Positions 13,347 to 33,930 of a stretch of DNA of 33,960 bases are shown here, piece by piece (the first letter of the stretch is position 1; every line of letters begins with the position of its first letter). The position numbers and the translations under genes are program-made. Location: the NCBI RefSeq assembly GCF_001194135.2, contig NC_068986.1:78713183-78747142 (forward strand). The letters are read 5' to 3'. The stretch comes from Octopus bimaculoides. Taxonomy: Eukaryota. Under the pieces are notes generated by a model. It worked only from the letters and a program-made list of their open reading frames with translations, did no database searches and was not told the DNA's origin.

Positions 13347-13760
13347 AAACGTGTCTTTGTAGTAAGAAGCTTGCTTTCCAGCCACATGGCTTAGGGGGTT
13401 CAGTCCCACTGCATGTCACCAAGAGGCAAGTGTTTCCTACTATATCCTCGGGCCGACCAAAACCTTGTGAGTGGATTTGGTACACGGAAACTGAAAGAAG
13501 CCCATCGTATAGGTATATATGTATGTGTTTTTATGTCTGTGTTTGTCTTTCCCATTACCGCTTGACAACTCGTGTTGGTGTGTTACGTCCCACTAACTTA
13601 GCAGTTCGGCAACAGATAACGATAGGATAAATATTAGGCTTAAAAAGAAAATAATTCTTGGGGGTTGATTTGTTCGACTAAAACCCTTCAAGGCGGTGCT
13701 TCAGCATAGCCGCAATTAAATGAATAAAATAAGTAAAAGAATATAAAAATAAAAGAAAAG
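13347..13760 (+). mobile_element. tRNA-derived SINE, full length (best copy in window)
   Basis: Degenerate A box, B-box-like ggttcagtccc (~13397), body accaagaggcaagtg...gggccgaccaaaaccttgtgagtggatttgg, central TATG/TG tract, 3' body ending aaggcggtgcttcagcatagccgc and an A-rich tail (aagtaaaaga). Confidence 0.9.
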
Positions 13761-15206: not shown

Positions 15207-15854
15207 CTTTGTGAGTTACAAGTAATGCTATCTGTTGGAGTCTCAGCTTTTTTAGCTGCTATTTCTGAACTTCGGTATATGGTGGAGCAAATGCTTGCTG
15301 ATCCCTTAATTATGTTTATAAATGTATGGGAACTTTTAAATAAGTTCTCCACCGATAATGGTGCTTACATACCGAAGGGCTTGGTAAAAATTATTAATTG
15401 TTGATTTATTAATAAATTAATAAATTGATAAATCTTTACCCTTTTAATTTGTAATGATTATTCACTCCCTGATAGTAAACGCAAAGCTTTTGCGGTATTG
15501 TTTGTAACGCACATGGTAATTTCTTGAGGAGGATGTAGTGGAATGACTGGCCGAGGTAAGTTCGGTTATGCTTTCAGATTGTGTCGAGGCATGATGTTCA
15601 CTCGTTCATACTTGCGCGGTTTGCTAGCATAGTCGAATGTACTACTGGAATATCATACCGATGACGGAAATTGAATTTTATCATTCATAATCCAGAAACG
15701 CGTCTATGATTAACTTTAAATGGTTAGTTTTCATTGTTTTTTCTTCTGTTTTTGCCTTTGTGAGTTACAAGTAATGCTATCTGTTGGAGTCTCAGTTTTT
15801 TTTAGCTGCTATTTCTGAACTTCGGTATATGGTGAAGCAAATGATTGCTGATCC
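15207..15854 (+). repeat. ~99-bp local direct duplication (15207-15304 and 15756-15854)
   Basis: Three substitutions plus one T insertion between copies; the second copy ends exactly at an N gap. Confidence 0.9.
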
Positions 15855-15918
15855 NNNNNNNNNNNNNNNNNNNNNNNNNNNNNNNNNNNNNNNNNNNNNN
15901 NNNNNNNNNNNNNNNNNN

Positions 15919-17856: not shown

Positions 17857-19613
17857 TGAATGGTACTGCCCAGGTGTCGAAACCATAATGATATCCATGG
17901 GACAGCTGATGATGGAGGTACATTGAATTGTTGGTGTGACTGTGGAATAAAATATCCCGTTGATATATATATATATATATATATATATCGAAAGAGAGAG
18001 AGAAAGAGAGGGAGAGAGTTAAGGAGATATAGATAGATATACGCATATATATATGTGTGTGTATGGTGTATGTATATAGATTGATAGATAGATAGATATA
18101 TAGTTAAATACATAGATAGGTAGCTATACACATAAAAATTTCTGAAAATTATTTTGCTTAGCTGCAGTTTTTCTTTGTTACAGCCAGCAATGTCACTAAA
18201 CATATGTGTGTCCGCTCTTGCATTACTTATTTCCATATAAAACTAAGCGTTTCAACTGTAATCTTACACCCATTCTTCATTCTTTCACATTCTTAGAAAG
18301 ATTAAAAACTAATGAAAGCAATTATCAGCTTAACTTTATTCATAATGCAGCTAATTTATTACCTAGCACTTAGCACTGCAGAGGTAAGATATTCCGAAAC
18401 AAGTGGGTCGACAGAAAAAGATAATTAAATATATATGAAAAATGTCTATTGCCTTGAATTATCTTTTACTTGCTTAAATAATGAGAACAATATTTTGCAT
18501 ACTTCTGATTCCCTTAAGATGAAAGTAAAGGGTATGTACATACATTCATTGATAAATACATACATACATACATACATACATATATGCATACATACATACA
18601 TGCATATATACATATATACATACATAAATGCATATTTAAGCACCCACATATCTATAAATACGTGTATATATATATATATATATNNNNNNNNNNNNNNNNN
18701 NNNNNNNNNNNNNNNNNNNNNNNNNNNNNNNNNNNNNNNNNNNNNNNNNNNNNNNNNNNNNNNNNNNNNNNNNNNNNNNNNNNNNNNNNNNNNNNNNNNN
18801 NNNNNNNNNNNNNNNNNNNNNNNNNNNNNNNNNNNNNNNNNNNNNNNNNNNNGCCCTGCATGCTAACGACTCTGCCAATTAAAATATAAAACAAAATAAA
18901 ATAAACATAAAATAAAAATAAGAAATAAGTTCAAATTTTAACCGTGAGTGTGTTAAATTTTAAGGCAAAATAAGAAAATGACTCTCCCCAGACACAACAG
19001 AATATGCTTCAACACACGAAATCTCATAAAGAGTCTTGCAAACCAAATCCCAAAACGAAATATCTATATATATAATACAAATGATATGTGAGCATATGCA
19101 TGTATATACATACATATATGTACATACCTACATCTACATGTATATATAGATGCATATCCGGGTACAGGACGTAAAAAAAAAACGTGGACATAAACAAAGC
19201 ACAAAGAACGAACTTTTTTTACGGACAACAGAATGAACACATCGGAAAACTGACAACTCACATATGGAACTTTTCCTTCATTAGCTGCCTCTATTCTAAA
19301 CTACGCGTTTCGAAGATGGATACAATCCACGTAATGGCTTTCTACAGAGTCTTTATTTAACCTAATTCACGCAACAAACGTAGGTCAATCCCAATATCTT
19401 TTGCTTGGAAAGCGAGCTCTCTAAGCATTCGGACCCATTGCGTGAATATATATATATTGATATCTATCTATATGTGTGTATGCATGTGTGTGTTTGTGTG
19501 TGTGTGTGTATGTGTGTGTGTGTGTGCATATACATAATCTGACAAACTTCAAAGAGGCTGGTGTTGTTCTGCTTTGGTAAGACTATATTATGTAGGGAAT
19601 TTGATAAAATTCA

Positions 19614-19646
19614 CAGTGAACGTTTCGGACACAGTCCTTCATCAAG
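19614..19646 (-). ncRNA. Hammerhead ribozyme remnant (PLE-type minimal type I), probably inactive
   Basis: Minus strand: UUGAUGA-A-GGAC(ugu)GUCC-GAAACGU-U-cacug. Stem II, GAAAC and palindromic stem III are intact, but C3 is U and there is no stem I partner. Confidence 0.4.
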
Positions 19647-19912
19647 GGAAAATGGAAGTATGTACATATGTGTGGGTGTGTTTCTGTATGCGTATGCGCT
19701 TGTGTGAGTAAGTGTATGCATTTGTGCGTGTATGTATATGCATGCATCTCTCTCTCCCCCTCTCTCTATATATGTGCGTATGTGTGTATGCGTGAGAGAG
19801 AGAAATAGAGGGAGAAAGTGGGAAGAGGAACATTTATTTGTGCGGTTCTTTGTTAATGATTTTACAACAGAGAAAATAGAAATACTTATAAGTCCTTTCA
19901 GCAACTTGTGAG

Positions 19913-20023
19913 ATATCAAGGACTGAGCCCAGCTTATTAATTCAATTAGAGAGTCAGGTGACACTATATGCCTGCAAGATGATTAATGAGATCGATGGTG
20001 CAATGAAATTATTCTTAATCAAG
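19913..20023. repeat. Segmental duplication block X, copy 1 (paralogue 26456-26566)
   Basis: 111-bp ungapped alignment, 88/111 identical (79%), offset 6543. Confidence 0.85.
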
Positions 20024-20258
20024 AACTCGGATGAAAAACACTTTTCTTTTTAAATCAATAACAAGCACCAAATCAATTGAGACTTAATCAGATCTTATGC
20101 ATACATACAACTGCAACAGCTTGATGTACATTTCGTAAATGTTTATAACAATATTTTACACTACTTAATGAAATAGTGTAGTACAAATAATGTTACAAGA
20201 AACTTTCCAAAGAATTTTAGAATGTGACAAGGCTGACACATTTTGAGATAGAGGTAAT

Positions 20259-20396
20259 ACTCATTTTTGCCGGTTGAATGGACAGGAGCAACGTGAAATA
20301 AAGTTTCTTGCTCAAGGACACAACGTGTCGCTGAGAATTGAACTCACCACCTTACGATGATGAGCCAAATGCCTTAAAGACTAAGCCACACGCCTT
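20259..20396 (-). mobile_element. tRNA-derived SINE head plus core of a second family
   Basis: Minus strand aggcgtgtggcttagtct (A box) ...gtgagttcaattctc (B box) ...gttgtgtccttgagcaagaaactttatttcacgttgctcc...ggcaaaaatgagt. Confidence 0.8.
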
Positions 20397-20414
20397 CACA
20401 TACAGACACGCACG

Positions 20415-20432
20415 CACACTCGCACACATATA

Positions 20433-20479
<47 letters not shown>

Positions 20480-20710
20480 GTGTGTGTGTATACCCGTCTG
20501 TCTATATGTGGATATGATTGTGGGTTTGTTCCCCGCACTGCTTAATAACCGGTGTTGCCTTGTTTACACACCTGTAACTTAACGGTTTAACAAAAGTGAA
20601 CTATAGAATAAGAACCGGATTTGAAAACAAAATAAAAACTGAAGTTCGTTTGAGGTGGTGCCCCAGCATGGCGGAAGTCTAATAACTGAAGTAAGCAAAA
20701 GATAGAATGA
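20415..20710 (+). mobile_element. (TG)n tract followed by 3' half of the main SINE family
   Basis: gtttgttccccgcactgcttaataaccggtgttg...taacttaacggtt...gaggtggtgccccagcatggc...aataactgaagtaagcaaaaga. Confidence 0.7.
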
Positions 20711-21055
20711 CTTTAAAAGATTCTACTTACTGCAAGTGAGGCTAATCTAATGAATGACTTTCCCATTGAATATTTTTGCAGCCAGGTTCGCCAGTTTGTG
20801 AAAATTTAGACTGCTCTACGAAGAGATTGGAACAAACAAGCAGGGTCTCCTTCTTCGGATAGAATTTCTATGTCAATTGTGATTATCATTTTTAATACAT
20901 TCTGTATAATCTATATATAATTTCTAGAAATTGTTCAAAGATTCTCGATCCGCAAATCTAAAAATAAAAGAAATTTTGATGCAGTCAACATCGTAAACAT
21001 TTTGGTTGCGTTGGATTGTGATACTGCTACTGTTGCTGCTGCCAGTACTGGTGGC

Positions 21056-21095
<40 letters not shown>

Positions 21096-21450
21096 TTGAT
21101 GATGATGATGAGGATGATGAGGATGATGATGATGATGATTAGGATGATGATTATGATGATTATGACAATGATGATGATGATAATGTTGGTGATAATGATA
21201 ATTAGGATAAAGCTGGAGATGATGAACTATGATTGATGTTGATGATAATGATGTTGAGGAAGAAGAGGAGGCAGAGGACAGGGAGTAGGAAGATGATTAT
21301 TGTGGTAATGATAATGACGGATATTATGATAATGTCGATGCTGAGGTTGACGATGCTGGTTGTAGTGATGGCTACAGTGATGTTAATGAAGATGATGATG
21401 ATGCAGTTTATAAAGATAACACTGACGATGAAGACGACGGTAAAGTCAAT
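21056..21450. repeat. (GAT)n and cryptic GNN trinucleotide array, copy 1
   Basis: Pure (GAT)n grading into GAT/GAC/GAG/GTT triplets; TAG stops interrupt the acidic frame. Confidence 0.9.
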
Positions 21451-21511
21451 GATGATATTGGCCATGATGCTGACACCGAAGAAACGTACTTTTCATCTGA
21501 AAAGTCTGCCT

Positions 21512-21517
21512 TTTATT
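21512..21517 (-). terminator. Candidate polyadenylation signal AATAAA
   Basis: About 40 nt after the candidate TAG stop; conserved at 28434-28439; GU-rich sequence follows. Confidence 0.35.
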
Positions 21518-21556
21518 TCGTTAATCGCGAAACTACAGTGTTGTTGTTTCATTGTT

Positions 21557-21675
21557 CTATAATCCATCCAGTTCTCTCTTACAAAACACCAATTCATTGC
21601 ACTTCAAGTCGACATATTTCCTCTCTTTGTTGACTTCTAATTGGTTGACAATGGCCGAATTTGAGATGTCTTCGG
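21557..21675 (-). CDS. Candidate terminal coding exon, unknown protein, copy 1: xEDISNSAIVNQLEVNKERKYVDLKCNELVFCKRELDGL*
   Basis: Polypyrimidine tract (ttttctgtttttctcctttc) then AAG acceptor, in-frame TAA just upstream, 38 open codons to TAG, AATAAA downstream, inside the 98% core. The AAG acceptor is weak and the product is not recognised. Confidence 0.45.
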
Positions 21676-21789
21676 CTTTTTGTTACGAAAGGAGAAAAAC
21701 AGAAAATCATTATTAGGAAGCTATTCTTTGAGCTTAATTATATTATTCCTTTATATTTTTTAAATATGAAAAGACTTCATCGACCTAAT

Positions 21790-22180
21790 TATATATGCAC
21801 ATCTATATACACATACATATATGTATATATGTGCGTGTACCTTCAGGTATATATATATATATATATATGTATACATATGTATGTATGTATGTATATATGT
21901 ATGTATACATACATACATATGTATGTATGTATGTATGTGTGTGTATGTGTGTTTGTGCGTGTGTGTATAGTTTTTCTTTTTTTTCTTTTATTTGTTTCAG
22001 TTATTTGACTGCAGAAATGCTGGAGCATCGTTTTAGTCGAACAAATCGTCCCCAGGACTTATTCTTTGCATGCCTAGTACTTAGTTTTTAGGTCTCTTTT
22101 TTTACGGGAACATAAACACACCAACATCGGTTGTCAAGCGATGGTGTGGAAAGACTCACAAACATATACACACATATACA
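21790..22180 (-). mobile_element. TATG/TG microsatellite plus 3' half of the main SINE family (21970-22180)
   Basis: tttgtttcagttatttgactgc...tgctggagcatcg...gtcgaacaaatcgtccccaggacttattctt...caccaacatcggttgtcaagcgatgg is the reverse complement of the family 3' body. Confidence 0.8.
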
Positions 22181-22508
22181 TGTATATCTATATATATGTA
22201 CATTTCAATAAGATAAGAAAATAGAGACAATAAATTATTATTTATTAATTAAAAATTGACAACAACGCTTACAGCTGTTTCATTTCTAGACATTCAGAAA
22301 ATTAATTAATAAAATAAAGAATCTTTTGGAAGTCAAATCTCGTCAGACGTAGTTTAAGGTATACAAAATAGGTGTTACAGTTGAATATTAATTGTAATGT
22401 TCAATATTGTTTATATAGGTAACTAACCAGTACATTTATTAGATTTTAGTGAGGTCTGTAAGTGAGCCATTAGTGAGTCCTTAGTGAGGTCTGTAACCTT
22501 TATTTGAA

Positions 22509-22549
<41 letters not shown>

Positions 22550-23453
22550 NNNNNNNNNNNNNNNNNNNNNNNNNNNNNNNNNNNNNNNNNNNNNNNNNNN
22601 NNNNNNNNNNNNNNNNNNNNNNNNNNNNNNNNNNNNNNNNNNNNNNNNNNNNNNNNNNNNNNNNNNNNNNNNNNNNNNNNNNNNNNNNNNNNNNNNNNNN
22701 NNNNNNNNNNNNNNNNNNNNNNNNNNNNNNNNNNNNNNNNNNNNNNNNNNNNNNNNNNNNNNNNNNNNNNNNNNNNNNNNNNNNNNNNNNNNNNNNNNNN
22801 NNNNNNNNNNNNNNNNNNNNNNNNNNNNNNNNNNNNNNNNNNNNNNNNNNNNNNNNNNNNNNNNNNNNNNNNNNNNNNNNNNNNNNNNNNNNNNNNNNNN
22901 NNNNNNNNNNNNNNNNNNNNNNNNNNNNNNNNNNNNNNNNNNNNNNNNNNNNNNNNNNNNNNNNNNNNNNNNNNNNNNNNNNNNNNNNNNNNNNNNNNNN
23001 NNNNNNNNNNNNNNNNNNNNNNNNNNNNNNNNNNNNNNNNNNNNNNNNNNNNNNNNNNNNNNNNNNNNNNNNNNNNNNNNNNNNNNNNNNNNNNNNNNNN
23101 NNNNNNNNNNNNNNNNNNNNNNNNNNNNNNNNNNNNNNNNNNNNNNNNNNNNNNNNNNNNNNNNNNNNNNNNNNNNNNNNNNNNNNNNNNNNNNNNNNNN
23201 NNNNNNNNNNNNNNNNNNNNNNNNNNNNNNNNNNNNNNNNNNNNNNNNNNNNNNNNNNNNNNNNNNNNNNNNNNNNNNNNNNNNNNNNNNNNNNNNNNNN
23301 NNNNNNNNNNNNNNNNNNNNNNNNNNNNNNNNNNNNNNNNNNNNNNNNNNNNNNNNNNNNNNNNNNNNNNNNNNNNNNNNNNNNNNNNNNNNNNNNNNNN
23401 NNNNNNNNNNNNNNNNNNNNNNNNNNNNNNNNNNNNNNNNNNNNNNNNNNNNN

Positions 23454-23484
<31 letters not shown>

Positions 23485-25855
23485 GTATATATGTATGTAT
23501 ATACATGTATGTTTGTATATAGGTCTGTGTATCTATGTGTGTATTTTGGTTGTAAACATTTATATATTTTTCTTCAATGTATATGTCTGTGTATATGTAT
23601 ATGGATGTAGTAATATGTGTATTTGTATATATGTGTATGTATATATACATATATGTATGTGTATGTATGTATGAGCGTATATATATATATATATGTGTGT
23701 GTTTGTATATGTATATCTTTATGTTTTGTCATCTTAATCTGTATAATAATATTGAATTTGGAAAATTAATTCTTTAATGGAGTAATTTGGAATTTTGAAT
23801 ATTTTTAGTGCATATTCTTGTAGTTACTGGAAAATAAATCGTTATATTAGTAATTTAATATTAATTACATATTACAAATAAGATGTCTTCACTATACTAA
23901 ATAACTATATATATAAATACATTCGCTATTTATTAATTGATGATAATCATAACAATAATAGAAATAATGATAATAATTAATGAATAGCTTTATTTCACTT
24001 ACTCAATTTGATAACCACAATAATAATAATTATTATAATATTGTATAGTTTATAACTTGTATTCTTGTTACAACAATATTATTTTGTTACTTGTGAAAGA
24101 ATTAATAAAACTTGGATATATATTATATATAGTAATTTAATTAAAAAAATAATAATATTAATTATATTTATCGAGGAGCAATACTCAAGGCTTGTGTTTG
24201 TTTGCATTACTTAATTTTTATTTACTGATTTCTGCCTTCCAATGATTGACGAATAATCATCCTTATTTAAGTAATTTCACATCTGGTTACTTCTAAAAAA
24301 CTAGTAATATTTTGCCATCCATTATTATAGCCTAACTCTAAATCTATGGAGTATTTAAGTTTGTAGTGTTTGTAGCTCTAAATTTATCTTCATTATTACG
24401 GATTTCTCCCTAGGATAAATTAAGTAAAGAAAGAAATTTTTTGCTAGGTTTCTATTTATATTTATTACGGAATTCTCCCTCCGATAAACAATAAATAAAG
24501 AATATTTTTATTAATTACTTCAAACAATCTTTTCTAAATAAATACATTTATATATTTTTTACACGTTTTACTACAGTTTATAGATTAAGACCCTGATACT
24601 TAATTATATACATTCATATTATTGTTGTATGTTATTATAATAGCGAAAGATTGTCTTCGACATAAACGAGTATTTTCTTTTATTAAATAACTGTTTATGT
24701 TATATTTTATTAATAGTATATTATGTTATATTATAATATAAATAAGTAATTGGATTGTCAAGTATATCTCTATATTAAATTTATTTTTTGTAATTTGAAT
24801 TATACCCATATTTACGTGGTATTCAACTGACGTACCAGAGAATTAAATATTCTACACACCCCTTTGAAAGAAACCCTTTCCTTAGTTTGTTNNNNNNNNN
24901 NNNNNNNNNNNNNNNNNNNNNNNNNNNNNNNNNNNNNNNNNNNNNNNNNNNNNNNNNNNNNNNNNNNNNNNNNNNNNNNNNNNNNNNNNNNNNNNNNNNN
25001 NNNNNNNNNNNNNNNNNNNNNNNNNNNNNNNNNNNNNNNNNNNNNNNNNNNNNNNNNNNNNNNNNNNNNNNNNNNNNNNNNNNNNNNNNNNNNNNNNNNN
25101 NNNNNNNNNNNNNNNNNNNNNNNNNNNNNNNNNNNNNNNNNNNNNNNNNNNNNNNNNNNNNNNNNNNNNNNNNNNNNNNNNNNNNNNNNNNNNNNNNNNN
25201 NNNNNNNNNNNNNNNNNNNNNNNNNNNNNNNNNNNNNNNNNNNNNNNNNNNNNNNNNNNNNNNNNNNNNNNNNNNNNNNNNNNNNNNNNNNNNNNNNNNN
25301 NNNNNNNNNNNNNNNNNNNNNNNNNNNNNNNNNNNNNNNNNNNNNNNNNNNNNNNNNNNNNNNNNNNNNNNNNNNNNNNNNNNNNNNNNNNNNNNNNNNN
25401 NNNNNNNNNNNNNNNNNNNNNNNNNNNNNNNNNNNNNNNNNNNNNNNNNNNNNNNNNNNNNNNNNNNNNNNNNNNNNNNNNNNNNNNNNNNNNNNNNNNN
25501 NNNNNNNNNNNNNNNNNNNNNNNNNNNNNNNNNNNNNNNNNNNNNNNNNNNNNNNNNNNNNNNNNNNNNNNNNNNNNNNNNNNNNNNNNNNNNNNNNNNN
25601 NNNNNNNNNNNNNNNNNNNNNNNNNNNNNNNNNNNNNNNNNNNNNNNNNNNNNNNNNNNNNNNNNNNNNNNNNNNNNNNNNNNNNNNNNNNNNNNNNNNN
25701 NNNNNNNNNNNNNNNNNNNNNNNNNNNNNNNNNNNNNNNNNNNNNNNNNNNNNNNNNNNNNNNNNNNNNNNNNNNNNNNNNNNNNNNNNNNNNNNNNNNN
25801 NNNNNNNNNNNNNNNNNNNNNNNNNNNNNNNNNNNNNNNNNNNNNNNNNNNNNNN

Positions 25856-25909
<54 letters not shown>

Positions 25910-26455
25910 ATGAACGGATGGATTCTTTCATTTCCCTACAACGTAGCGACTGTTGTTTCAGCAAGGCAAATACTCGACGAGACTCGTTAGGAAGTTAGTA
26001 TATCTACAGTGATCAGGCTTAGCGAACATTAGGCTTCCTGAAACGGCGGTAGTCATACTCTAAGGTTGTGAATAAAGAAACCCTTTAGAATAGTGGGTTA
26101 TGGACCAATACAATGGAAATAACGTATTCATCCATTTCGCATATACATATACACAGAGTTACATTTATGCTTTTATAACTGTTTGACACGTATATGTATG
26201 CATATATATGTTTGTATATGTGTTTGTGTGTGTGTGCAAATATATGTATGTATGTGTGTATGTGTTTGTGTGTACGTATATATATATGAATGCATACATA
26301 TACATGTTTTTTATATCACATATATGTGTGTATTCGTGTACGCTTATATAGTTTTACCTATACGCACTTACGTATATAAGCATGAACATGCGCATGTATA
26401 TGAAGACAGATCCATTGCTGCAAGCCATTCCTCAATGCTTTTAGCACGTAGAGAA

Positions 26456-26566
26456 ATATCATGATCTGATCCCAGTTTATTAATTTAGTATGAAATTCAG
26501 GTGTCAGCGTATGCCCGTAACATGATTAAGGAGATCAGTGATGCAATGAAATAATTCTTAATCAAG
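26456..26566. repeat. Segmental duplication block X, copy 2
   Basis: 79% ungapped match to 19913-20023. Confidence 0.85.
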
Positions 26567-26980
26567 CAGTCTAAGAATAAAATCTTCCTTATTGACAAGT
26601 TAATAACACAAGGTAATATCCACCTCAGTTCCTAAACTGATCCTATTCTTCTTATGTAAGTATACAATACCAACGATTCGATAGATAAGTTGTACAATGT
26701 TGATGTAATGACTTAAATTAGTAAGGCAATTAATACTGCATTTATTGCTAGAAGCTTTTCAATCAATTTTATCGAAATAATGTTTATACAGACGGGAGTG
26801 CAGTAAAATTGTTATGCATCATATAATGCATCCCTCTAAGTTTATGATAATTTTCGAGGATTAAGTTGTAAATTCAGATCTTATTGTTTATACAGTTCTA
26901 TATTTAAGAGATGAGAAATTATGTACATTATTTACATTATTTATAATTGACGGATATTTGTCCTCATCTTGTTTGTTGTT

Positions 26981-27026
26981 AACACAACGTTTCGGCTGAT
27001 ATACTCTCCAGGCTTCATCCGGTGTC
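26981..27026 (-). ncRNA. Minimal type I hammerhead ribozyme motif (mutated copy)
   Basis: 5'-GACAC CGGAUGA A GCCUG gagaguauau CAGCC GAAACGU U GUGUU-3'. Stem I GACAC/GUGUU, stem II with one C-C mismatch, palindromic ACGU stem III; core U4 is G in this copy. Confidence 0.7.
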
Positions 27027-27073
27027 TTGGGGAAATTTCGAAACTGGGTTCTCATTCCTAAGGTATTTTTCGA

Positions 27074-27107
<34 letters not shown>

Positions 27108-27112
27108 ATTAC

Positions 27113-27152
<40 letters not shown>
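27074..27152. repeat. (GTT)n(ATT)n microsatellite inside the PLE terminal region
   Basis: Directly visible. Confidence 0.95.
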
Positions 27153-27153
<1 letters not shown>

Positions 27154-27790
27154 GCTCGCGCTCTTAAACACTACGCCATATGCTCGTGGGCAATTATGGA
27201 ATGAATTTTAGGGCTTATAAATCTAATATTCTCCTATCCTTCCTTAATACCGGTTCCCATATGCTGCTCATATCTGCACTTGGTCTGCTTAGGAGGTTGT
27301 TGTGTAATAGCATATGTGCTGCTTCTTTTAGTCTTCGTATTTTCCACTGAGGTTCTCTGTCTATTATTTTAACTTCATCCCACAGGGGGAGACGGTCTCT
27401 ATTTTCCATACATGATCAACTATACCCGATTTATCAATATCTCCTCGTATCATAGCTTTGTGATATTCCTCTACTCTTATTTTGAGGGGGCGACATGTTT
27501 CGCCTTTGTATAATCAACCACAGCTGCATGGGATGGAGTACAGGCAGTTCTTGGTCATATTCTCTTCTATTGGTCGTTTTACTCGAAGGAGATATTTACA
27601 AAGTGTTGTATTACTCTTGAATACTGTCCTGATGTCATATGGGCCGCATATCTTTCGTATATTTGCGGAAAATTGTAAATAATATAAATAATCTTATCGT
27701 TTATGTTGAACAGTAGTCAGAACACGTCTGCTCAAGCTTTAATACAAGACCTACAAACAATAAATGCCAAACTATGATTTTCCTGTTGTA

Positions 27791-27860
27791 GACAGCCATA
27801 TTTTCTTACTGTTACTGTAGTGGACAGCTATATTTTTTACCGTTACTGTAGTGGACAGCC
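27791..27860 (+). repeat. ~31-bp tandem repeat, about 2.2 copies
   Basis: gacagccatattttcttactgttactgtagtg / gacagctatattttttaccgttactgtagtg / gacagcc. Confidence 0.85.
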
Positions 27861-28069
27861 ATTGCCCCTACGAACTGGTTGGGCTTATGTCATCTCTGCT
27901 GGAATCCTCTCCCCATCCCATCATGTTTACAATATCAAACACACCTAGCTCCGTACAAATTACTTTTTTGGTTCAACAGTTTTCATTTTTCTATGTTGAT
28001 AGAAATTCTCGGAAGTAAAAATTAAGTGTCACCACAACACAAACAAAAACGAGAAGAACGAGAGGCAAT

Positions 28070-28372
28070 CATACTGCTAATAACGACGGCAAAGATGTTG
28101 ATAATGAAGATGACGACGTTGACGACAACTACGGCTAGGACTACGAAGATGTCGATGATGATGATGATAAAGACGATGAAGACGATGGTGGAGACGACGA
28201 CGGCGCCGCAAGTGCCAATGACGATGCTGCCGTCGCCGTCGGCAATATCAATGATGGTGTTGATGTAGGCGGCGGCGAGGACAACGCCAAAGACGACAAC
28301 GTAAGCAACGACGGTGGTGATGGTGCTGATGATGTAGTTTATGAAGATAATACTGACGACGGTAACGTCAGT
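28070..28372. repeat. Cryptic GAC/GAT/GGC trinucleotide array, copy 2
   Basis: Directly visible; positionally equivalent to 21056-21450. Confidence 0.9.
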
Positions 28373-28636
28373 GATGATATTGGCCATGATGCTGACACCG
28401 AAGAAACGTACTTTTCATCTGAAAAGTCCGTCTTTTATTTCGTTAATCGAGAAACTACAGTGTTGTTGTTTCATTGTTCTATAATCCATCCAGTTCTCTC
28501 TTACAAAACACCAATTCATTGCACTTCAAGTCGACATATTTCATCTCTTTGTTGACTTCTAATTGGTTGACAATGGCCGAATTTGAGATGTCTTCGGCTT
28601 TTTGTTACGAAAGGAGAAAACCAGAAAATCATTATT
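28373..28636. repeat. Segmental duplication core, copy 2
   Basis: 98.1% identical to 21451-21714. Confidence 0.95.
28479..28597 (-). CDS. Candidate terminal coding exon, unknown protein, copy 2: xEDISNSAIVNQLEVNKEMKYVDLKCNELVFCKRELDGL*
   Basis: Same signals as copy 1; single R/M difference. Confidence 0.45.
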
Positions 28637-28759
28637 GGCAAGATTATTTATTTCGATTTAATTATTTTCTTATTATTATATTTTCCTTCGTTCGAATATT
28701 GTAATATTAAAAATGAGATAATACATTATCGACCTAGATATTGAGGCCTTACAAACATA

Positions 28760-29103
28760 TATACCTACATACATACATACTTACAAACGCGCATGCATAC
28801 ATACATACATACACACATACATACATACATACATACATACGCGCATGCATACATACAGACATACATACATGCATGCACACGTACTAACAGACTGACAGAC
28901 GCACACATGCACAGACTCACGCATACATGTTCAAATATATATATAAATACATACATACATTTATATATACATATATATATATACATATGTATAAATACAT
29001 ATATATATGTAGAGGTATATGTACATATATATATATATATTTATGCATATATGTAAACACACCCAAACACACACCTCGTAATGACATACTTATGCACAAA
29101 CAC

Positions 29104-29142
<39 letters not shown>

Positions 29143-29160
29143 CATGCATAATACAATACA
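28760..29160. repeat. Compound (TACA)n/(TA)n/(CA)n microsatellite
   Basis: Directly visible. Confidence 0.9.
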
Positions 29161-29897
29161 CGCATGGCATCTATAGATGTACATTGTACGAGTAGTAAAC
29201 TCGTGTTTCGTGTGTGCTCATATAATTTATTTGATATNNNNNNNNNNNNNNNNNNNNNNNNNNNNNNNNNNNNNNNNNNNNNNNNNNNNNNNNNNNNNNN
29301 NNNNNNNNNNNNNNNNNNNNNATATATATATATATATATATATAACGAATATAATATTAAATAGGCCACGTCGTATAACTATATATAGTCATACATGTAT
29401 GTATGCATGTATGTATGTATATATATATTTCTGCGTACGCATTCATGATATAATTCTTCCGCCATTATTCTTACTATAAGATTACAAAACTTAGTATTTC
29501 TTAGAAACACAGACAGTGTTCTTTAGTATTTTCTTTCATTTCCTTATCTTGTATATAGGCTCTTTTTTATCTTTCTATTGTCTAAGTGCTTTCCGATTTG
29601 TATTTTTAGCAGTGGTTTAACTCTGTAAATAGATGTGCTATGTCTTCGATGTCGAGCAAGAATACATATTTTTCGATAATCTCTAACACAGACACACATA
29701 CACATACACATACACAAACATAAATTTGTATGGGCGCGCATGTGTATATGTTCTATGAAATCAAGATTCATTTGGATATATATGTAAGTGTTACGTTTCG
29801 AGTAGTTCTTGGTTCCAAAGGACTGTTCAAAGCTTTCAACTATAACGGTAAATGGCTTCTGCAAATAATTTTATCCCAACTAATAATCACACACCTA

Positions 29898-31549: not shown

Positions 31550-32100
31550 GCCTTGATGCAGTAAAAGACAGCGGCTCTCATGTCTTCCGATCTTAATTGA
31601 TTGGAAGTGTTATAATGTACATTGTTTTGTCTTGGTATAAAATAGGCTACAACAAATATTCTGCTCAACACCAAAGATTTGCTTGTCAGTTGTTTGACCA
31701 TAAACAGTTGAGCATGTTCCTTGGTGGCTGACGATATGTGCATCTCTGATCATGAGCAGAAGTAGTGGGGGAGCATCGTAACCATGTGTTGAGAGAAATT
31801 CTTTGGGGTTTGGATGATTCACCTTTGGAAACATGGGTGTTTTGTTCAACATCCTTAAAATCCCTTTTTCAGGTACCTTTTGAGTGGGGCGGGCTACTCG
31901 ACCTGACGAAAATTCTAACTGGGCCCCAGCTGAAAGGTCATGCGCTGTTTATCTTGATAGGATATCACCATGTCATACACATATGGCTGTTATGCATGTG
32001 CCTGGTGTAACCTTATCTGACGAGTAGTCATGATGTGTATATTGGGCTTCGTATATTTTACCCTAGTGTCACTTTGATGGCATTTACTGCTCTCTCACTC
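31550..32100 (+). mobile_element. ~550-bp unclassified retroposon-like repeat ending in (AAT)n
   Basis: Starts right after an (AAT)n tail and ends ctgctctctcactc(AAT)n. Its last 106 bp recur at 32851-32956 (7 differences). No A/B box or ORF recognised. Confidence 0.7.
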
Positions 32101-32206
32101 AATAATAATAATAATGATGATGATGATGATGATGATCATGATGATTATGATGATGATGATGATGATCATGATGATCATGATTTTGATGATGATGATGATG
32201 ATGATG

Positions 32207-32276: not shown

Positions 32277-32845
32277 CCTCATGGAAGGAGAAAAAATGTA
32301 AGGTCAGTTTTGAAGAGATTCGAACGCCAAGATACAAAAGACCGGTTGTTATTGATGATGAGGAGTTATCTGAAGATAGAGACAGAAGCACTTATAAGCG
32401 CAACTCAAGAACAAGATTTAAGGACTATGTGAAGTGCAGAATCGACAACACTACCGACAGTGACAAATGCAGAATGTGTGGTGAAATGGGTGAAATGATA
32501 TGGCACATCGTTAGCGAAAGCCCGAAATTGGCACAACGCGAATACAAAAGACGACATGATGATGTGGTAAGAATGATCCATTGGGAGCTCTGTGGAAATC
32601 ACAGCGCACAATGAGCAAAGCCGTTGTATGAGCACACACCAGACGCTGTCACCTAGAATGAAAATTGCAAAACACTGCAGGATGCAATGAATCAATGCGA
32701 TCATCTGACCAGACATCGGAAACCGGACGTTGTTGTGGTGGAAGAAAAGAAAGAAAGAACATGTATGATAATCGACATAGCATGTGCCGGTGACAACAAG
32801 ATCAAAGAGAAAGAAGAAAGACTGAAAAACTGTGACTATTTGAAG
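32277..32845 (+). mobile_element. R4/Dong-like LINE fragment: CCHC zinc knuckle plus PD-(D/E)xK restriction-like endonuclease
   Basis: WKEKKM*GQF (cf. WxxKxLHGQF), then DKCRMCGEMGEMIWHIVSESPKLAQREYKRRHDDVVRMIHWELC, then RKPDVVVVEEKKERTCMIIDIACAGDNKIKEKEE; stops and frameshifts present. Confidence 0.9.
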
Positions 32846-32850
32846 TTTTT

Positions 32851-32975
32851 CATGTGCCTGGTGTAACCTTATCAGACGAGTAGTCATGATGGGTATACTG
32901 GGCTTCGTATATTTTACCCCAGTGTCCCTTTGACGGCATTCACTGCTCTCTCACTCAATAACGATAATAATGATG
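32851..32975 (+). mobile_element. 3' end of the ~550-bp repeat with a short AAT/GAT tail
   Basis: 99/106 identical to 31995-32100. Confidence 0.9.
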
Positions 32976-33335: not shown

Positions 33336-33605
33336 CTGGAGAATAGATTAAGACTTGCAAGAGATTTCGGTTAAAATATGTGAGTTAAAACTAAATCGAT
33401 TTACACGAAATAATAAGATTAAGCATTTTCTATTGATATAGAACCATCACAGATAGGACCACAAAATACCACAACGGGAGATATGCAATTCCAAGCTGTG
33501 GATTGTACAAAATAAACTATACCTCAAACAAACAGATGCATACATGCATACACTCATTCACATATGTATGTATCTATGTATGTAAGCATGTATGTATATA
33601 TATAT

Positions 33606-33930
33606 TCTTTTATTCTTTTATTTGTCTCAGTTATTTGAAAGCGCACCGCCTTTTGGTCGAAGAAATCGACTTCAGGACTTCTTCTATTGTACACTTTTGC
33701 CGAATCACTAAGTTACGGGGACATAAACACACTAACATCGGCTATTAAGCGATGGCGGTGGCACAAACACACACACACACTCATATATATATATGAAGGG
33801 CTTCTTTTAGTTTCTGTCTACCAAATCCACTTACAAAGATCTGGTCGGCCCGAGGTTATAGTCGAAGACACTTGCCGAAGGTGCTACACAGTGGGACTGA
33901 ACTCGAAACCACACAGCCATGCCCGCGCCT
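33606..33930 (-). mobile_element. tRNA-derived SINE, near full length with a deletion between the A and B boxes
   Basis: Minus strand aggcgcgggcatggctgtgtgg (A box) fused to tttcgagttcagtcccactg (B box), then the family body, central TA/TG tract and 3' body. Confidence 0.85.

What the first reader, a model, noticed from the sequence alone, without database searches (positions are those of the whole stretch)
21451..28636. Tandem duplicated units with a 98%-identical core that looks like the last exon of an unknown gene
The 264-bp core differs at only 5 sites, while adjacent flanks are clearly diverged and indel-ridden and block X is 79% identical. The conserved span covers a minus-strand polypyrimidine tract/acceptor, a 38-codon frame with two Cys, the stop and AATAAA. 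This points to strong constraint or recent gene conversion on a functional element in a tandem gene pair. The peptide is not one I recognise, so it may be a lineage-specific family. The rest of copy 1 could lie in the 22.5-23.5 kb or 24.9-25.9 kb gaps.
Basis: partly seen in the sequence, partly recalled or inferred. Interest (0 to 1): 0.7.

Follow-up and report, generated by a model that had tools for sequence, protein, structure and literature searches.

The report
Gene-conversion patch in an old duplication
Two old, badly diverged copies of a roughly 2.5-kb stretch of repeat-rich DNA share one 265-base patch that is still 98% identical, which is best explained by one copy recently overwriting the other (gene conversion) rather than by a hidden gene, so it is real but ordinary.

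Summary
Bases 21450-21714 and 28372-28636 (265 nt, offset 6922) differ at 5 sites (98.1%). A second collinear block is only 77-78% identical, and the immediate flanks fall to about 90% on the left and 65-70% on the right. This contrast cannot be chance (P about 1e-20).

The "last exon" reading is not supported:
- A 41-codon open stretch occurs in 79-87% of comparable 265-nt pieces, and the core holds two longer open frames on the other strand.
- The acceptor is weak (AAG) and AATAAA is common here (1.6 per kb per strand).
- No frame matches any protein, Pfam or Rfam family.
- The only significant-looking hits (leucine-rich-repeat proteins) come from summing 5-8 weak repeat matches of 3-11 bits each.
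- In the proposed frame the copies show 0 synonymous and 1 non-synonymous difference, so protein-level selection cannot explain the identity.
- No further conserved island lies on the side where upstream exons would be.

Best explanation: a non-allelic gene-conversion tract of typical length in an old local duplication. Whether it marks a functional element cannot be decided here, because no genome or transcriptome of this organism was searchable.

The two copies sit on different contigs separated by two gaps, so the tandem order and the 6.9-kb spacing rest on scaffolding.

The parts
21450..21714 (.). Core, copy 1 (265 nt, 98.1% identical to copy 2)
28372..28636 (.). Core, copy 2
21396..21449 (.). 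Left shoulder of copy 1: about 90% identical, one 9-nt indel (partner 28327-28371)
   Evidence: z = 10.9
28327..28371 (.). Left shoulder of copy 2
21715..21800 (.). Right flank of copy 1: weak residual homology (about 65-70%) to 28637-28750, followed by microsatellite
   Evidence: z = 3.5; second half z = 4.2
28637..28750 (.). Right flank of copy 2
19666..20219 (.). Block X, copy 1: second collinear homology block. Best part 19895-20024 is 77-78% identical. Used here as the background divergence of the duplication.
26216..26771 (.). Block X, copy 2 (best part 26438-26567)
21050..21395 (.). Degenerate (GAT)n-type tract left of core 1. By alignment score it is about as similar to an unrelated GAT tract as to its partner.
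28070..28326 (.). Degenerate GAT/GAC-rich tract left of core 2. Its + strand frame is open from 28139 to 28552.
21557..21675 (-). Not supported as coding.
28479..28597 (-). The same putative exon in copy 2 (R to M at codon 18)
21512..21517 (-). AATAAA, 39 nt after the TAG (copy 2: 28434-28439). The motif occurs 1.6 times per kb per strand in this window.
22550..23453 (.). Assembly gap 1 between the copies, with (TA)n on both edges
24892..25855 (.). Assembly gap 2 between the copies, with (GT)n on the right edge

Best explanation
An old local duplication left two paralogous segments of about 2.3-2.7 kb (19666-21918 and 26216-28874) in the same orientation. They are placed about 6.9 kb apart on one scaffold, in repeat-rich DNA with no recognisable protein domain. 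The segments have drifted to about 60-78% identity and have been broken up by copy-specific sequence and microsatellites. Later, a short stretch of one copy was copied over the homologous stretch of the other by non-allelic (interlocus) gene conversion, that is, repair of a break using the paralogue as template. This reset 265 bp to identity, and 5 substitutions have accumulated since. The 54-bp shoulder at about 90% may be the remnant of an older, overlapping tract.

Shown: the paralogy, the size and edges of the island, and that identity is blind to reading frame and to the supposed exon/intron/UTR borders.

Inferred: the conversion mechanism itself, and that the island need not be functional.
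For: 1. Two collinear homology blocks, each present only twice in the window. Background identity is 77-78% at best against 98.1% in the core; P about 1e-20 under uniform divergence.
2. The right edge is sharp: 100% falls to about 65% at 21714/21715, while the flank beyond is still weakly homologous. This argues for a patch inside older paralogy, not an element inserted into unrelated DNA.
3. Identity is uniform across the supposed intron end, coding part and 3' flank. Selection on a protein cannot be what keeps the copies alike.
4. At 265 bp the tract matches the mean tract length of non-allelic conversion estimated in humans (250 bp, 10.1101/135152). It is also about the minimal identical segment of roughly 200 bp needed for efficient conversion (PMC3924818).
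5. Nothing found points to a gene or known RNA: no protein, Pfam or Rfam match and no overall excess of RNA structure (z = -0.13 and -0.50).
Against: - Conversion is inefficient below about 80% identity (PMC3924818), and the flanks are below that. The core must therefore have stayed similar until the last event, either through repeated conversion or through constraint, which leaves room for a functional element.
- With only two sequences and no orthologue, conversion cannot be told apart from extreme nucleotide-level constraint.
- Copy number in the rest of the genome is unknown.
- Tandem order and spacing depend on two scaffold gaps.
- In the + strand acidic frame the 4 in-frame core differences split 3 synonymous to 1 non-synonymous. 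This is a weak hint of coding that does not hold once the shoulder is added (4 to 5 by my count from the mismatches).
Confidence: 0.55

Rival explanations
1. The core is the terminal exon (minus strand, 21675 to 21557, and +6922) of a lineage-specific protein-coding gene present as a tandem pair, kept alike by selection with or without conversion.
For: An AG preceded by a pyrimidine tract, a 38-codon frame, a stop, and AATAAA 39 nt later occur in the right order in both copies. Conversion islands in diverged duplicates often coincide with functional sequence (my own knowledge). The protein collections seem to hold nothing close to this organism: the best match to a LINE fragment of the window is 54% identical, so the missing homologues are weak evidence.
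Against: - 79% of shuffles and 87% of real 265-nt pieces of this window hold an open stretch of 41 or more codons, and the core has 61- and 63-codon open frames on the other strand.
- The acceptor is AAG, with 10 purine-rich bases between the pyrimidine tract and the AG.
- AATAAA occurs 1.6 times per kb per strand.
- The frame shows 0 synonymous and 1 non-synonymous difference.
- No hit in 5.8 billion clustered proteins, none that survives among 1.84 billion representatives, and none in Pfam.
- No second conserved island on the upstream side; the other homologous block lies beyond the supposed 3' end.
Confidence: 0.1
2. The core belongs to a dispersed repeat family. For example, it could be the 3' end of a non-LTR retroelement on the minus strand: end of an ORF, stop, AATAAA, then an (ATC)n-type tail. 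The two copies would then be alike because both are young or share a conserved part of the element.
For: On the minus strand the order ORF end, stop, AATAAA, degenerate ATC-rich tail resembles a LINE 3' end. The window is full of repeats, including several SINE-like copies and a LINE fragment. The right edge of identity is sharp, as at a 5' truncation.
Against: - Only two copies in 34 kb.
- Homology continues, weakly but significantly, beyond the sharp edge.
- Block X lies collinear on the same side in both copies, which fits a segmental duplication better than two independent insertions.
- No TE protein domain in any frame.
- No terminal inverted repeats or target-site duplication noticed on inspection, and no tRNA-like head.
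Confidence: 0.12
3. The core is a non-coding functional element (a regulatory element or a small structured RNA such as a hairpin precursor) held by nucleotide-level constraint in both copies.
For: Frame-blind, uniform conservation is what such an element would show. An 80-nt hairpin at 21625-21704 (+) folds at -22.5 kcal/mol, z = -3.18.
Against: - The whole core has no excess structure (z = -0.13 and -0.50).
- The hairpin was the best of about 700 windows tried.
- Its z is only -2.15 in copy 2, where the single difference (21699) weakens the basal stem without compensation.
- No Rfam family at gathering score, and only chance-level matches at E up to 10.
Confidence: 0.08
4. The coding strand is the + strand. 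The GAT-rich tract plus the core would encode the C-terminus of an acidic (Asp/Glu-rich) protein ending ...HCTSSRHISSLC* at 21633/28555.
For: The + frame is open for 138 codons in copy 2 (28139-28552) and keeps triplet phase. The 9-nt indel is in frame. Within the core this frame shows 3 synonymous and 1 non-synonymous difference.
Against: - There is no ATG in the open frame, and an upstream stop in both copies.
- Copy 1 has in-frame stops and a frame shift in the acidic part.
- Open frames and triplet phase are expected from a decayed GAT repeat.
- With the shoulder added the count is 4 synonymous to 5 non-synonymous (my count).
- No protein or Pfam match.
Confidence: 0.05
5. The core holds an internal 93-nt, phase 1-1 exon (21675 to 21583, donor T|GTAAGA) encoding one unit of a ribonuclease-inhibitor-type leucine-rich repeat. 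The two copies would be duplicated repeat exons.
For: - The peptide contains MKYVDLKCNEL, which fits LxxLxLxxNxL.
- The only hits in the exhaustive search are NLR-like LRR proteins, and four of the five PDB hits are also LRR proteins.
- A post-hoc model of their repeat scores the two peptides 14.4 and 10.7 bits, against 5.2 for the next ORF of the window and a maximum of 12.5 in 85,414 random ORFs.
- A GTAAGA donor sits where joining exon to exon would give the family's repeat spacing (my own reading).
Against: - Each single matched stretch scores only 3-11 bits, with independent E-values of 3e4 to 1e9. The whole-protein E-values of 1e-7 to 4e-4 come from summing 5-8 near-identical repeats.
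- The model was chosen after the fact from 1.84 billion proteins.
- Pfam LRR_6 and the other LRR models do not match the peptide, nor an artificial four-unit concatenation.
- There is no other LRR-like ORF in the window.
Confidence: 0.05
6. Assembly artefact: the second copy or the near-identity was created by the assembler, by gap filling, or by mis-scaffolding of paralogous or allelic contigs.
For: The scaffold is short-read-like with nine gaps. The copies are on separate contigs. Elsewhere, a 99-nt stretch at a gap edge (15756-15854) repeats sequence 549 nt upstream at 96%.
Against: Both cores lie well inside their contigs, 836 nt and 2516 nt from the nearest gap. They differ at 5 sites and have flanks at 65-78% identity, which neither allelic haplotypes nor a pasted duplicate would give.
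Confidence: 0.05

Closest known systems
Non-allelic (interlocus) gene-conversion tracts in tandem or segmental duplications, as surveyed in 10.1101/135152 and PMC3924818
   Same: A short patch of near-identity inside paralogues that are otherwise much more diverged. Its length (265 bp) is close to the estimated mean tract (250 bp). The paralogues are in the same orientation and a few kb apart. Identity is indifferent to codon position.
   Different: Conversion here is inferred from two sequences only, with no outgroup or population data. The flanks are below the roughly 80% identity at which conversion is normally efficient. The locus has no demonstrable gene.
3' ends of non-LTR retrotransposons (LINEs) with microsatellite-type tails
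   Same: On the minus strand: end of an open frame, stop, AATAAA, then a degenerate trinucleotide-repeat tract. A sharp 5' edge of similarity.
   Different: Only two copies seen. Weak homology continues past the edge. There is a collinear second block. No reverse-transcriptase or other TE domain.
Ribonuclease-inhibitor-type leucine-rich repeats (Pfam LRR_6) of NLR-like proteins
   Same: The minus-strand peptide carries an LxxLxLxxNxL-like motif preceded by A-I-x-x-x-L-x-V-N-K, as in the repeats of P0001-P0003.
   Different: Single-unit scores are at chance level. Pfam LRR models do not match. There is no array of units.

Membership tests
Interlocus gene-conversion tract | Lies within paralogous sequence whose background divergence is much higher than that of the tract | tested here: met
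   Core 98.1% against block X 77-78%, left shoulder about 90%, right flank 65-70%. P about 1e-20.
Interlocus gene-conversion tract | Tract length in the range of tens to about a thousand bp | tested here: met
   265 bp, against a mean of 250 bp with CI 63-1000 (10.1101/135152).
Interlocus gene-conversion tract | Homogenisation independent of coding position (silent sites identical too) | tested here: met
Interlocus gene-conversion tract | Paralogues within a species closer to each other than to their orthologues in a sister species (tree incongruence across the tract) | not testable with these tools
   No genome of this organism or its relatives was searchable. A 24-mer of the core has no match in the JGI metagenome contigs.
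Protein-coding terminal exon | Open frame longer than chance allows | tested here: not met
   79% of shuffles and 87% of real 265-nt pieces hold 41 or more open codons; two longer frames lie on the other strand.
Protein-coding terminal exon | Excess of synonymous over non-synonymous change between copies | tested here: not met
   0 synonymous, 1 non-synonymous (R/M). With one difference this is weak either way.
Protein-coding terminal exon | Homologous protein or domain | tested here: not met
   Caveat: the collections appear to lack close relatives of this genome.
Protein-coding terminal exon | Consensus splice acceptor and polyadenylation signal | tested here: inconclusive
   A pyrimidine tract is present, but the acceptor is AAG after a purine-rich spacer. 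AATAAA is present but frequent (1.6 per kb per strand). Loosely defined acceptor-like sites occur 2.0 times per kb per strand.
Protein-coding terminal exon | Transcription and splicing | not testable with these tools
   No RNA-seq data available.
Transposable element or dispersed repeat | More than two copies | tested here: inconclusive
   Two copies in the 34-kb window. Genome-wide copy number is not testable.
Transposable element or dispersed repeat | TE protein domain, terminal repeats, target-site duplication or pol III head | tested here: not met
   No Pfam domain, no tRNA-like sequence, and no terminal inverted repeat beyond a trivial 7-mer.
Ribonuclease-inhibitor-type leucine-rich repeat (LRR_6) | Significant match of a unit to an LRR profile | tested here: not met
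   Pfam finds no LRR family, even for a 4-unit artificial concatenation. Single stretches score 3-11 bits.
Ribonuclease-inhibitor-type leucine-rich repeat (LRR_6) | Tandem array of units | tested here: not met
   No other LRR-like ORF in the six-frame translation of the window.
Known RNA families (Rfam 15) | Match at gathering score | tested here: not met
   0 matches in the window. Only chance-level matches in 28250-28750.

The most novel reading that the evidence does not exclude
The island is kept alike because it is functional. It could also be a small structured RNA. Conversion plus selection would then maintain it while everything around it decays.
Probability: 0.15. Interest if true: 0.4.

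Novelty: new member of a known kind. Interest (0 to 1): 0.15.

Why it matters
It matters little beyond annotation. The finding is a clean small example of how a patch of near-identity inside diverged duplicates can look like an exon under constraint. The silent-site test shows how to tell the two apart from sequence alone. If transcript data later showed the core to be expressed and spliced, it would add a lineage-specific small exon or RNA. It would also be a case where conversion and selection together preserve a roughly 265-bp island.

Tried and rejected
1. Word-indexed protein search with the minus-strand peptide found no candidate. A concatenation of the + strand acidic tail, the + frame-3 ORF and the minus MANII ORF gave 8000 word candidates, none at E of 10 or less.

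2. Exhaustive phmmer of the peptide against 1.84 billion representatives gave 3 hits, all NLR-like LRR proteins from ENA metagenome assemblies. I followed this as a lead. I built a repeat model, calibrated it on 85,414 random ORFs, checked PDB and Pfam, and recomputed per-stretch scores. I rejected it as unproven: the significance comes from summing repeats, and the generic LRR profiles do not match.

3. Pfam on 8 chosen ORFs and on all 148 open stretches of 45 or more codons gave nothing beyond chance.

4. Rfam at gathering score for the window, and at E of 10 or less for copy 2, gave nothing real. There are no tRNAs.

5. RNA folding of the core on both strands showed no excess stability. A window scan turned up one 80-nt hairpin of borderline z.

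6. I looked for further collinear islands right of the cores and left of block X. Only SINE-like and low-complexity matches appeared.

7. An exact 24-mer of the core had no match in the JGI metagenome contigs.

8. Exact look-ups of the two minus-strand ORFs that start in the core were not on record.

9. The third protein search went to a LINE fragment of the window to gauge database coverage. The best hit was 54% identical and all hits were unnamed ENA or Logan proteins. Negative protein results for this organism therefore carry little weight.

10. The haplotype or assembly-duplicate idea was rejected because the flanks are only 65-78% identical.
Full report
**What is there.**
- In a MAFFT alignment with mismatches listed, 21450-21714 aligns to 28372-28636 without indels. 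There are 5 mismatches (21507, 21509, 21528, 21621, 21699): 98.1% over 265 nt at an offset of 6922.
- nhmmer finds just these two copies in the window.
- To the left, a 54-nt shoulder (21396-21449) carries 5 substitutions and a 9-nt indel. Beyond it, a degenerate GAT-type tract aligns at 40-58%. By alignment score it is about as similar to an unrelated GAT tract at 32.1 kb as to its partner.
- To the right, identity collapses at 21715 to about 65-70%. The next 85 nt are still more alike than dinucleotide shuffles (z = 3.5; second half z = 4.2, 0 of 500 shuffles). Microsatellites follow.
Its best 108-130 nt are 77-78% identical. It is present only twice in the window.
- The sequence between block X and the core block (20220-21146 vs 26772-28067) does not align.

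So there are two paralogous segments of about 2.3-2.7 kb. Their background identity is at most about 78%, and one island is at 98%. Under uniform 21% divergence, 5 or fewer differences in 265 nt has P about 1e-20.

**The gaps.** Neither the cores nor their alignable flanks touch a gap.
- Copy 1 lies in contig 18853-22549, 836 nt from gap 22550-23453.
- Copy 2 lies in contig 25856-29237, 2516 nt from gap 24892-25855.
- Gap 1 has (TA)n on both edges, so it probably sits in a long TA tract. Gap 2 has unique sequence on one side and (GT)n on the other.
- No feature of the finding has to be read across a gap.
- The tandem order, the orientation and the 6.9-kb spacing rest on scaffolding across two gaps of estimated length.
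- ORFs and inverted repeats that span the N runs are artefacts.

None of them discriminates.
- 79% of shuffles of the core and 87% of real 265-nt pieces of this window contain an open stretch of 41 or more codons.
- The core itself has three such stretches, and the two longer ones (61 and 63 codons) are on the + strand.
- AATAAA occurs 1.6 times per kb per strand, and loosely defined acceptor-like sites occur 2.0 times per kb per strand.
- The acceptor is AAG, separated from the pyrimidine tract by the purine-rich cgtaacaaaa. By general knowledge of metazoan splice sites this is weak.

The pattern of differences speaks against protein-level constraint as the cause of identity. With about 21 synonymous sites and neutral divergence of 21-30%, zero silent differences has P = 0.007-0.0006. 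Near-identity also runs unchanged through 40 nt of supposed intron and more than 100 nt beyond the stop. Whatever keeps the copies alike acts on the DNA, not on a protein.

**Homology searches.**
- The peptide shares no three 5-residue words with any of 5.8 billion clustered proteins.
- The other open frames give nothing at E of 10 or less.
- Pfam finds nothing in any frame, nor in any of the 148 open stretches of 45 or more codons in the whole window.
- Rfam has no match at gathering score, and only chance-level matches near copy 2.
- No tRNA-like sequence is present.
- Caveat: a LINE fragment of this window (about 32.3-32.9 kb) finds only unnamed ENA or Logan proteins at 54% identity or less. 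The collections therefore seem to hold nothing close to this organism, and these negatives are weak.

**The leucine-rich-repeat lead.** The exhaustive phmmer search returned three hits with E = 1e-7 to 4e-4. All are NLR-like proteins with ribonuclease-inhibitor-type leucine-rich repeats from ENA metagenome assemblies. Four of the five weak PDB hits are also LRR proteins.

Points in favour:
- The peptide carries an LxxLxLxxNxL-like motif (MKYVDLKCNEL).
- A minus-strand donor T|GTAAGA at 21583|21582 would define a 93-nt phase 1-1 exon. Joined head to tail, such exons would reproduce the repeat spacing of those proteins.
- A repeat model built from the hits scores the two peptides 14.4 and 10.7 bits. 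The next ORF in the window scores 5.2, and the maximum among 85,414 composition-matched random ORFs is 12.5.

Points against:
- That model was picked after the fact from 1.84 billion proteins.
- Recomputing the hits shows each single stretch scores only 3-11 bits (independent E-values 3e4-1e9). The apparent significance comes from adding 5-8 near-identical repeats.
- Pfam's LRR models match neither the peptide nor an artificial four-unit concatenation.
- There is no other LRR-like ORF in the window.

I keep this as an unproven lead (about 5%).

**Other readings.**
- RNA structure. The core has no excess stability on either strand (z = -0.13 and -0.50). One 80-nt hairpin (21625-21704, +) has z = -3.18 in copy 1 and -2.15 in copy 2. 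It was the best of about 700 windows, and the single difference in it weakens a stem without compensation.
- The + strand acidic frame. It is open for 138 codons in copy 2, keeps triplet phase, and shows 3 synonymous to 1 non-synonymous differences in the core. It has no ATG, it is broken in copy 1, and the ratio vanishes when the shoulder is added. A decayed GAT repeat would give the same open frame.
- Retroelement 3' end. This model fits the minus-strand order of features and the sharp right edge. It does not fit the residual homology beyond that edge or the collinear block X.
- Haplotype or assembly duplicate. This does not fit flanks at 65-78% identity.
- Tandem gene pair. There is no further collinear island on the side where upstream exons would lie.

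**Best explanation.** An old local duplication was followed by a recent non-allelic gene conversion that reset about 265 bp to identity.
- The length matches the mean tract estimated for non-allelic conversion in humans (250 bp, CI 63-1000; 10.1101/135152).
- It also matches the roughly 200-bp minimal identical segment for efficient conversion (PMC3924818).
- The same review notes that conversion is rare below about 80% identity. The island must therefore have stayed similar up to the last event, by repeated conversion or by constraint. This is the main reason a functional element cannot be excluded.

I put conversion without demonstrated function at about 0.55. Together, the readings in which the island is functional in some way come to about 0.25-0.3. 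A dispersed repeat is at about 0.12 and an artefact at about 0.05.

**Verdict.** This is an ordinary instance of a well-known process in repeat-rich DNA. What would settle it is a blastn of the core against the source genome and sister species, stranded RNA-seq, and long reads across the two gaps.

Noticed in passing
window 32300-32860 (+): Decayed 3' part of a non-LTR retrotransposon ORF (Cys/His motif CRMCG...HIVSESPKLAQREY), interrupted by stops. The best database relatives are unnamed ENA or Logan proteins at 54% identity or less, some carrying PF13966 (zf-RVT).
   Followed up: partly
window 31989-32119 and 32845-32975: A 131-nt direct repeat, 92% identical and 856 nt apart, brackets that LINE fragment. 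Each copy is followed by AAT/GAT-type simple repeats. It could be a repeat-element end or a local duplication.
   Followed up: no
window 15207-15304 and 15756-15854: A 99-nt stretch, 96% identical, is repeated 549 nt apart. The second copy ends exactly at the gap 15855-15918. This looks like a gap-edge assembly duplication or a real tandem repeat.
   Followed up: no
window 9925-10258, 13350-13721, 33651-33911 (-), 21901-22182, 33536-33795: Several copies, at 68-74% identity, of one or two SINE-like repeat families are scattered through the window. One copy lies just right of core copy 1.
   Followed up: no
window 28139-28552 (+): A 138-codon open frame rich in Asp, Gly and Glu runs through the GAT-type tract into core copy 2, with no ATG and no database match. 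Its antisense frame is open too (121-aa Ile/Val-rich ORF 28022-28387, starting at an ATG inside the core).
   Followed up: partly
window 21625-21704 (+) and 28547-28626 (+): An 80-nt hairpin with -22.5 and -19.9 kcal/mol, z = -3.18 and -2.15. It overlaps the supposed acceptor and depends on G-U pairs, so the minus strand folds much more weakly.
   Followed up: partly
window 22508-23498: The long 'inverted repeats' I1-I6 reported by the repeat finder are N runs matched to N runs across gap 1, not real sequence.
   Followed up: yes
locus L001 (ENA ERZ25072283, contig of 7.3 kb): P0001 is an uninterrupted 632-aa NLR-like protein with about ten ribonuclease-inhibitor-type leucine-rich repeats (LRR_6, 163 bits), from a metagenome assembly. 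It is presumably of eukaryotic origin.
   Followed up: no
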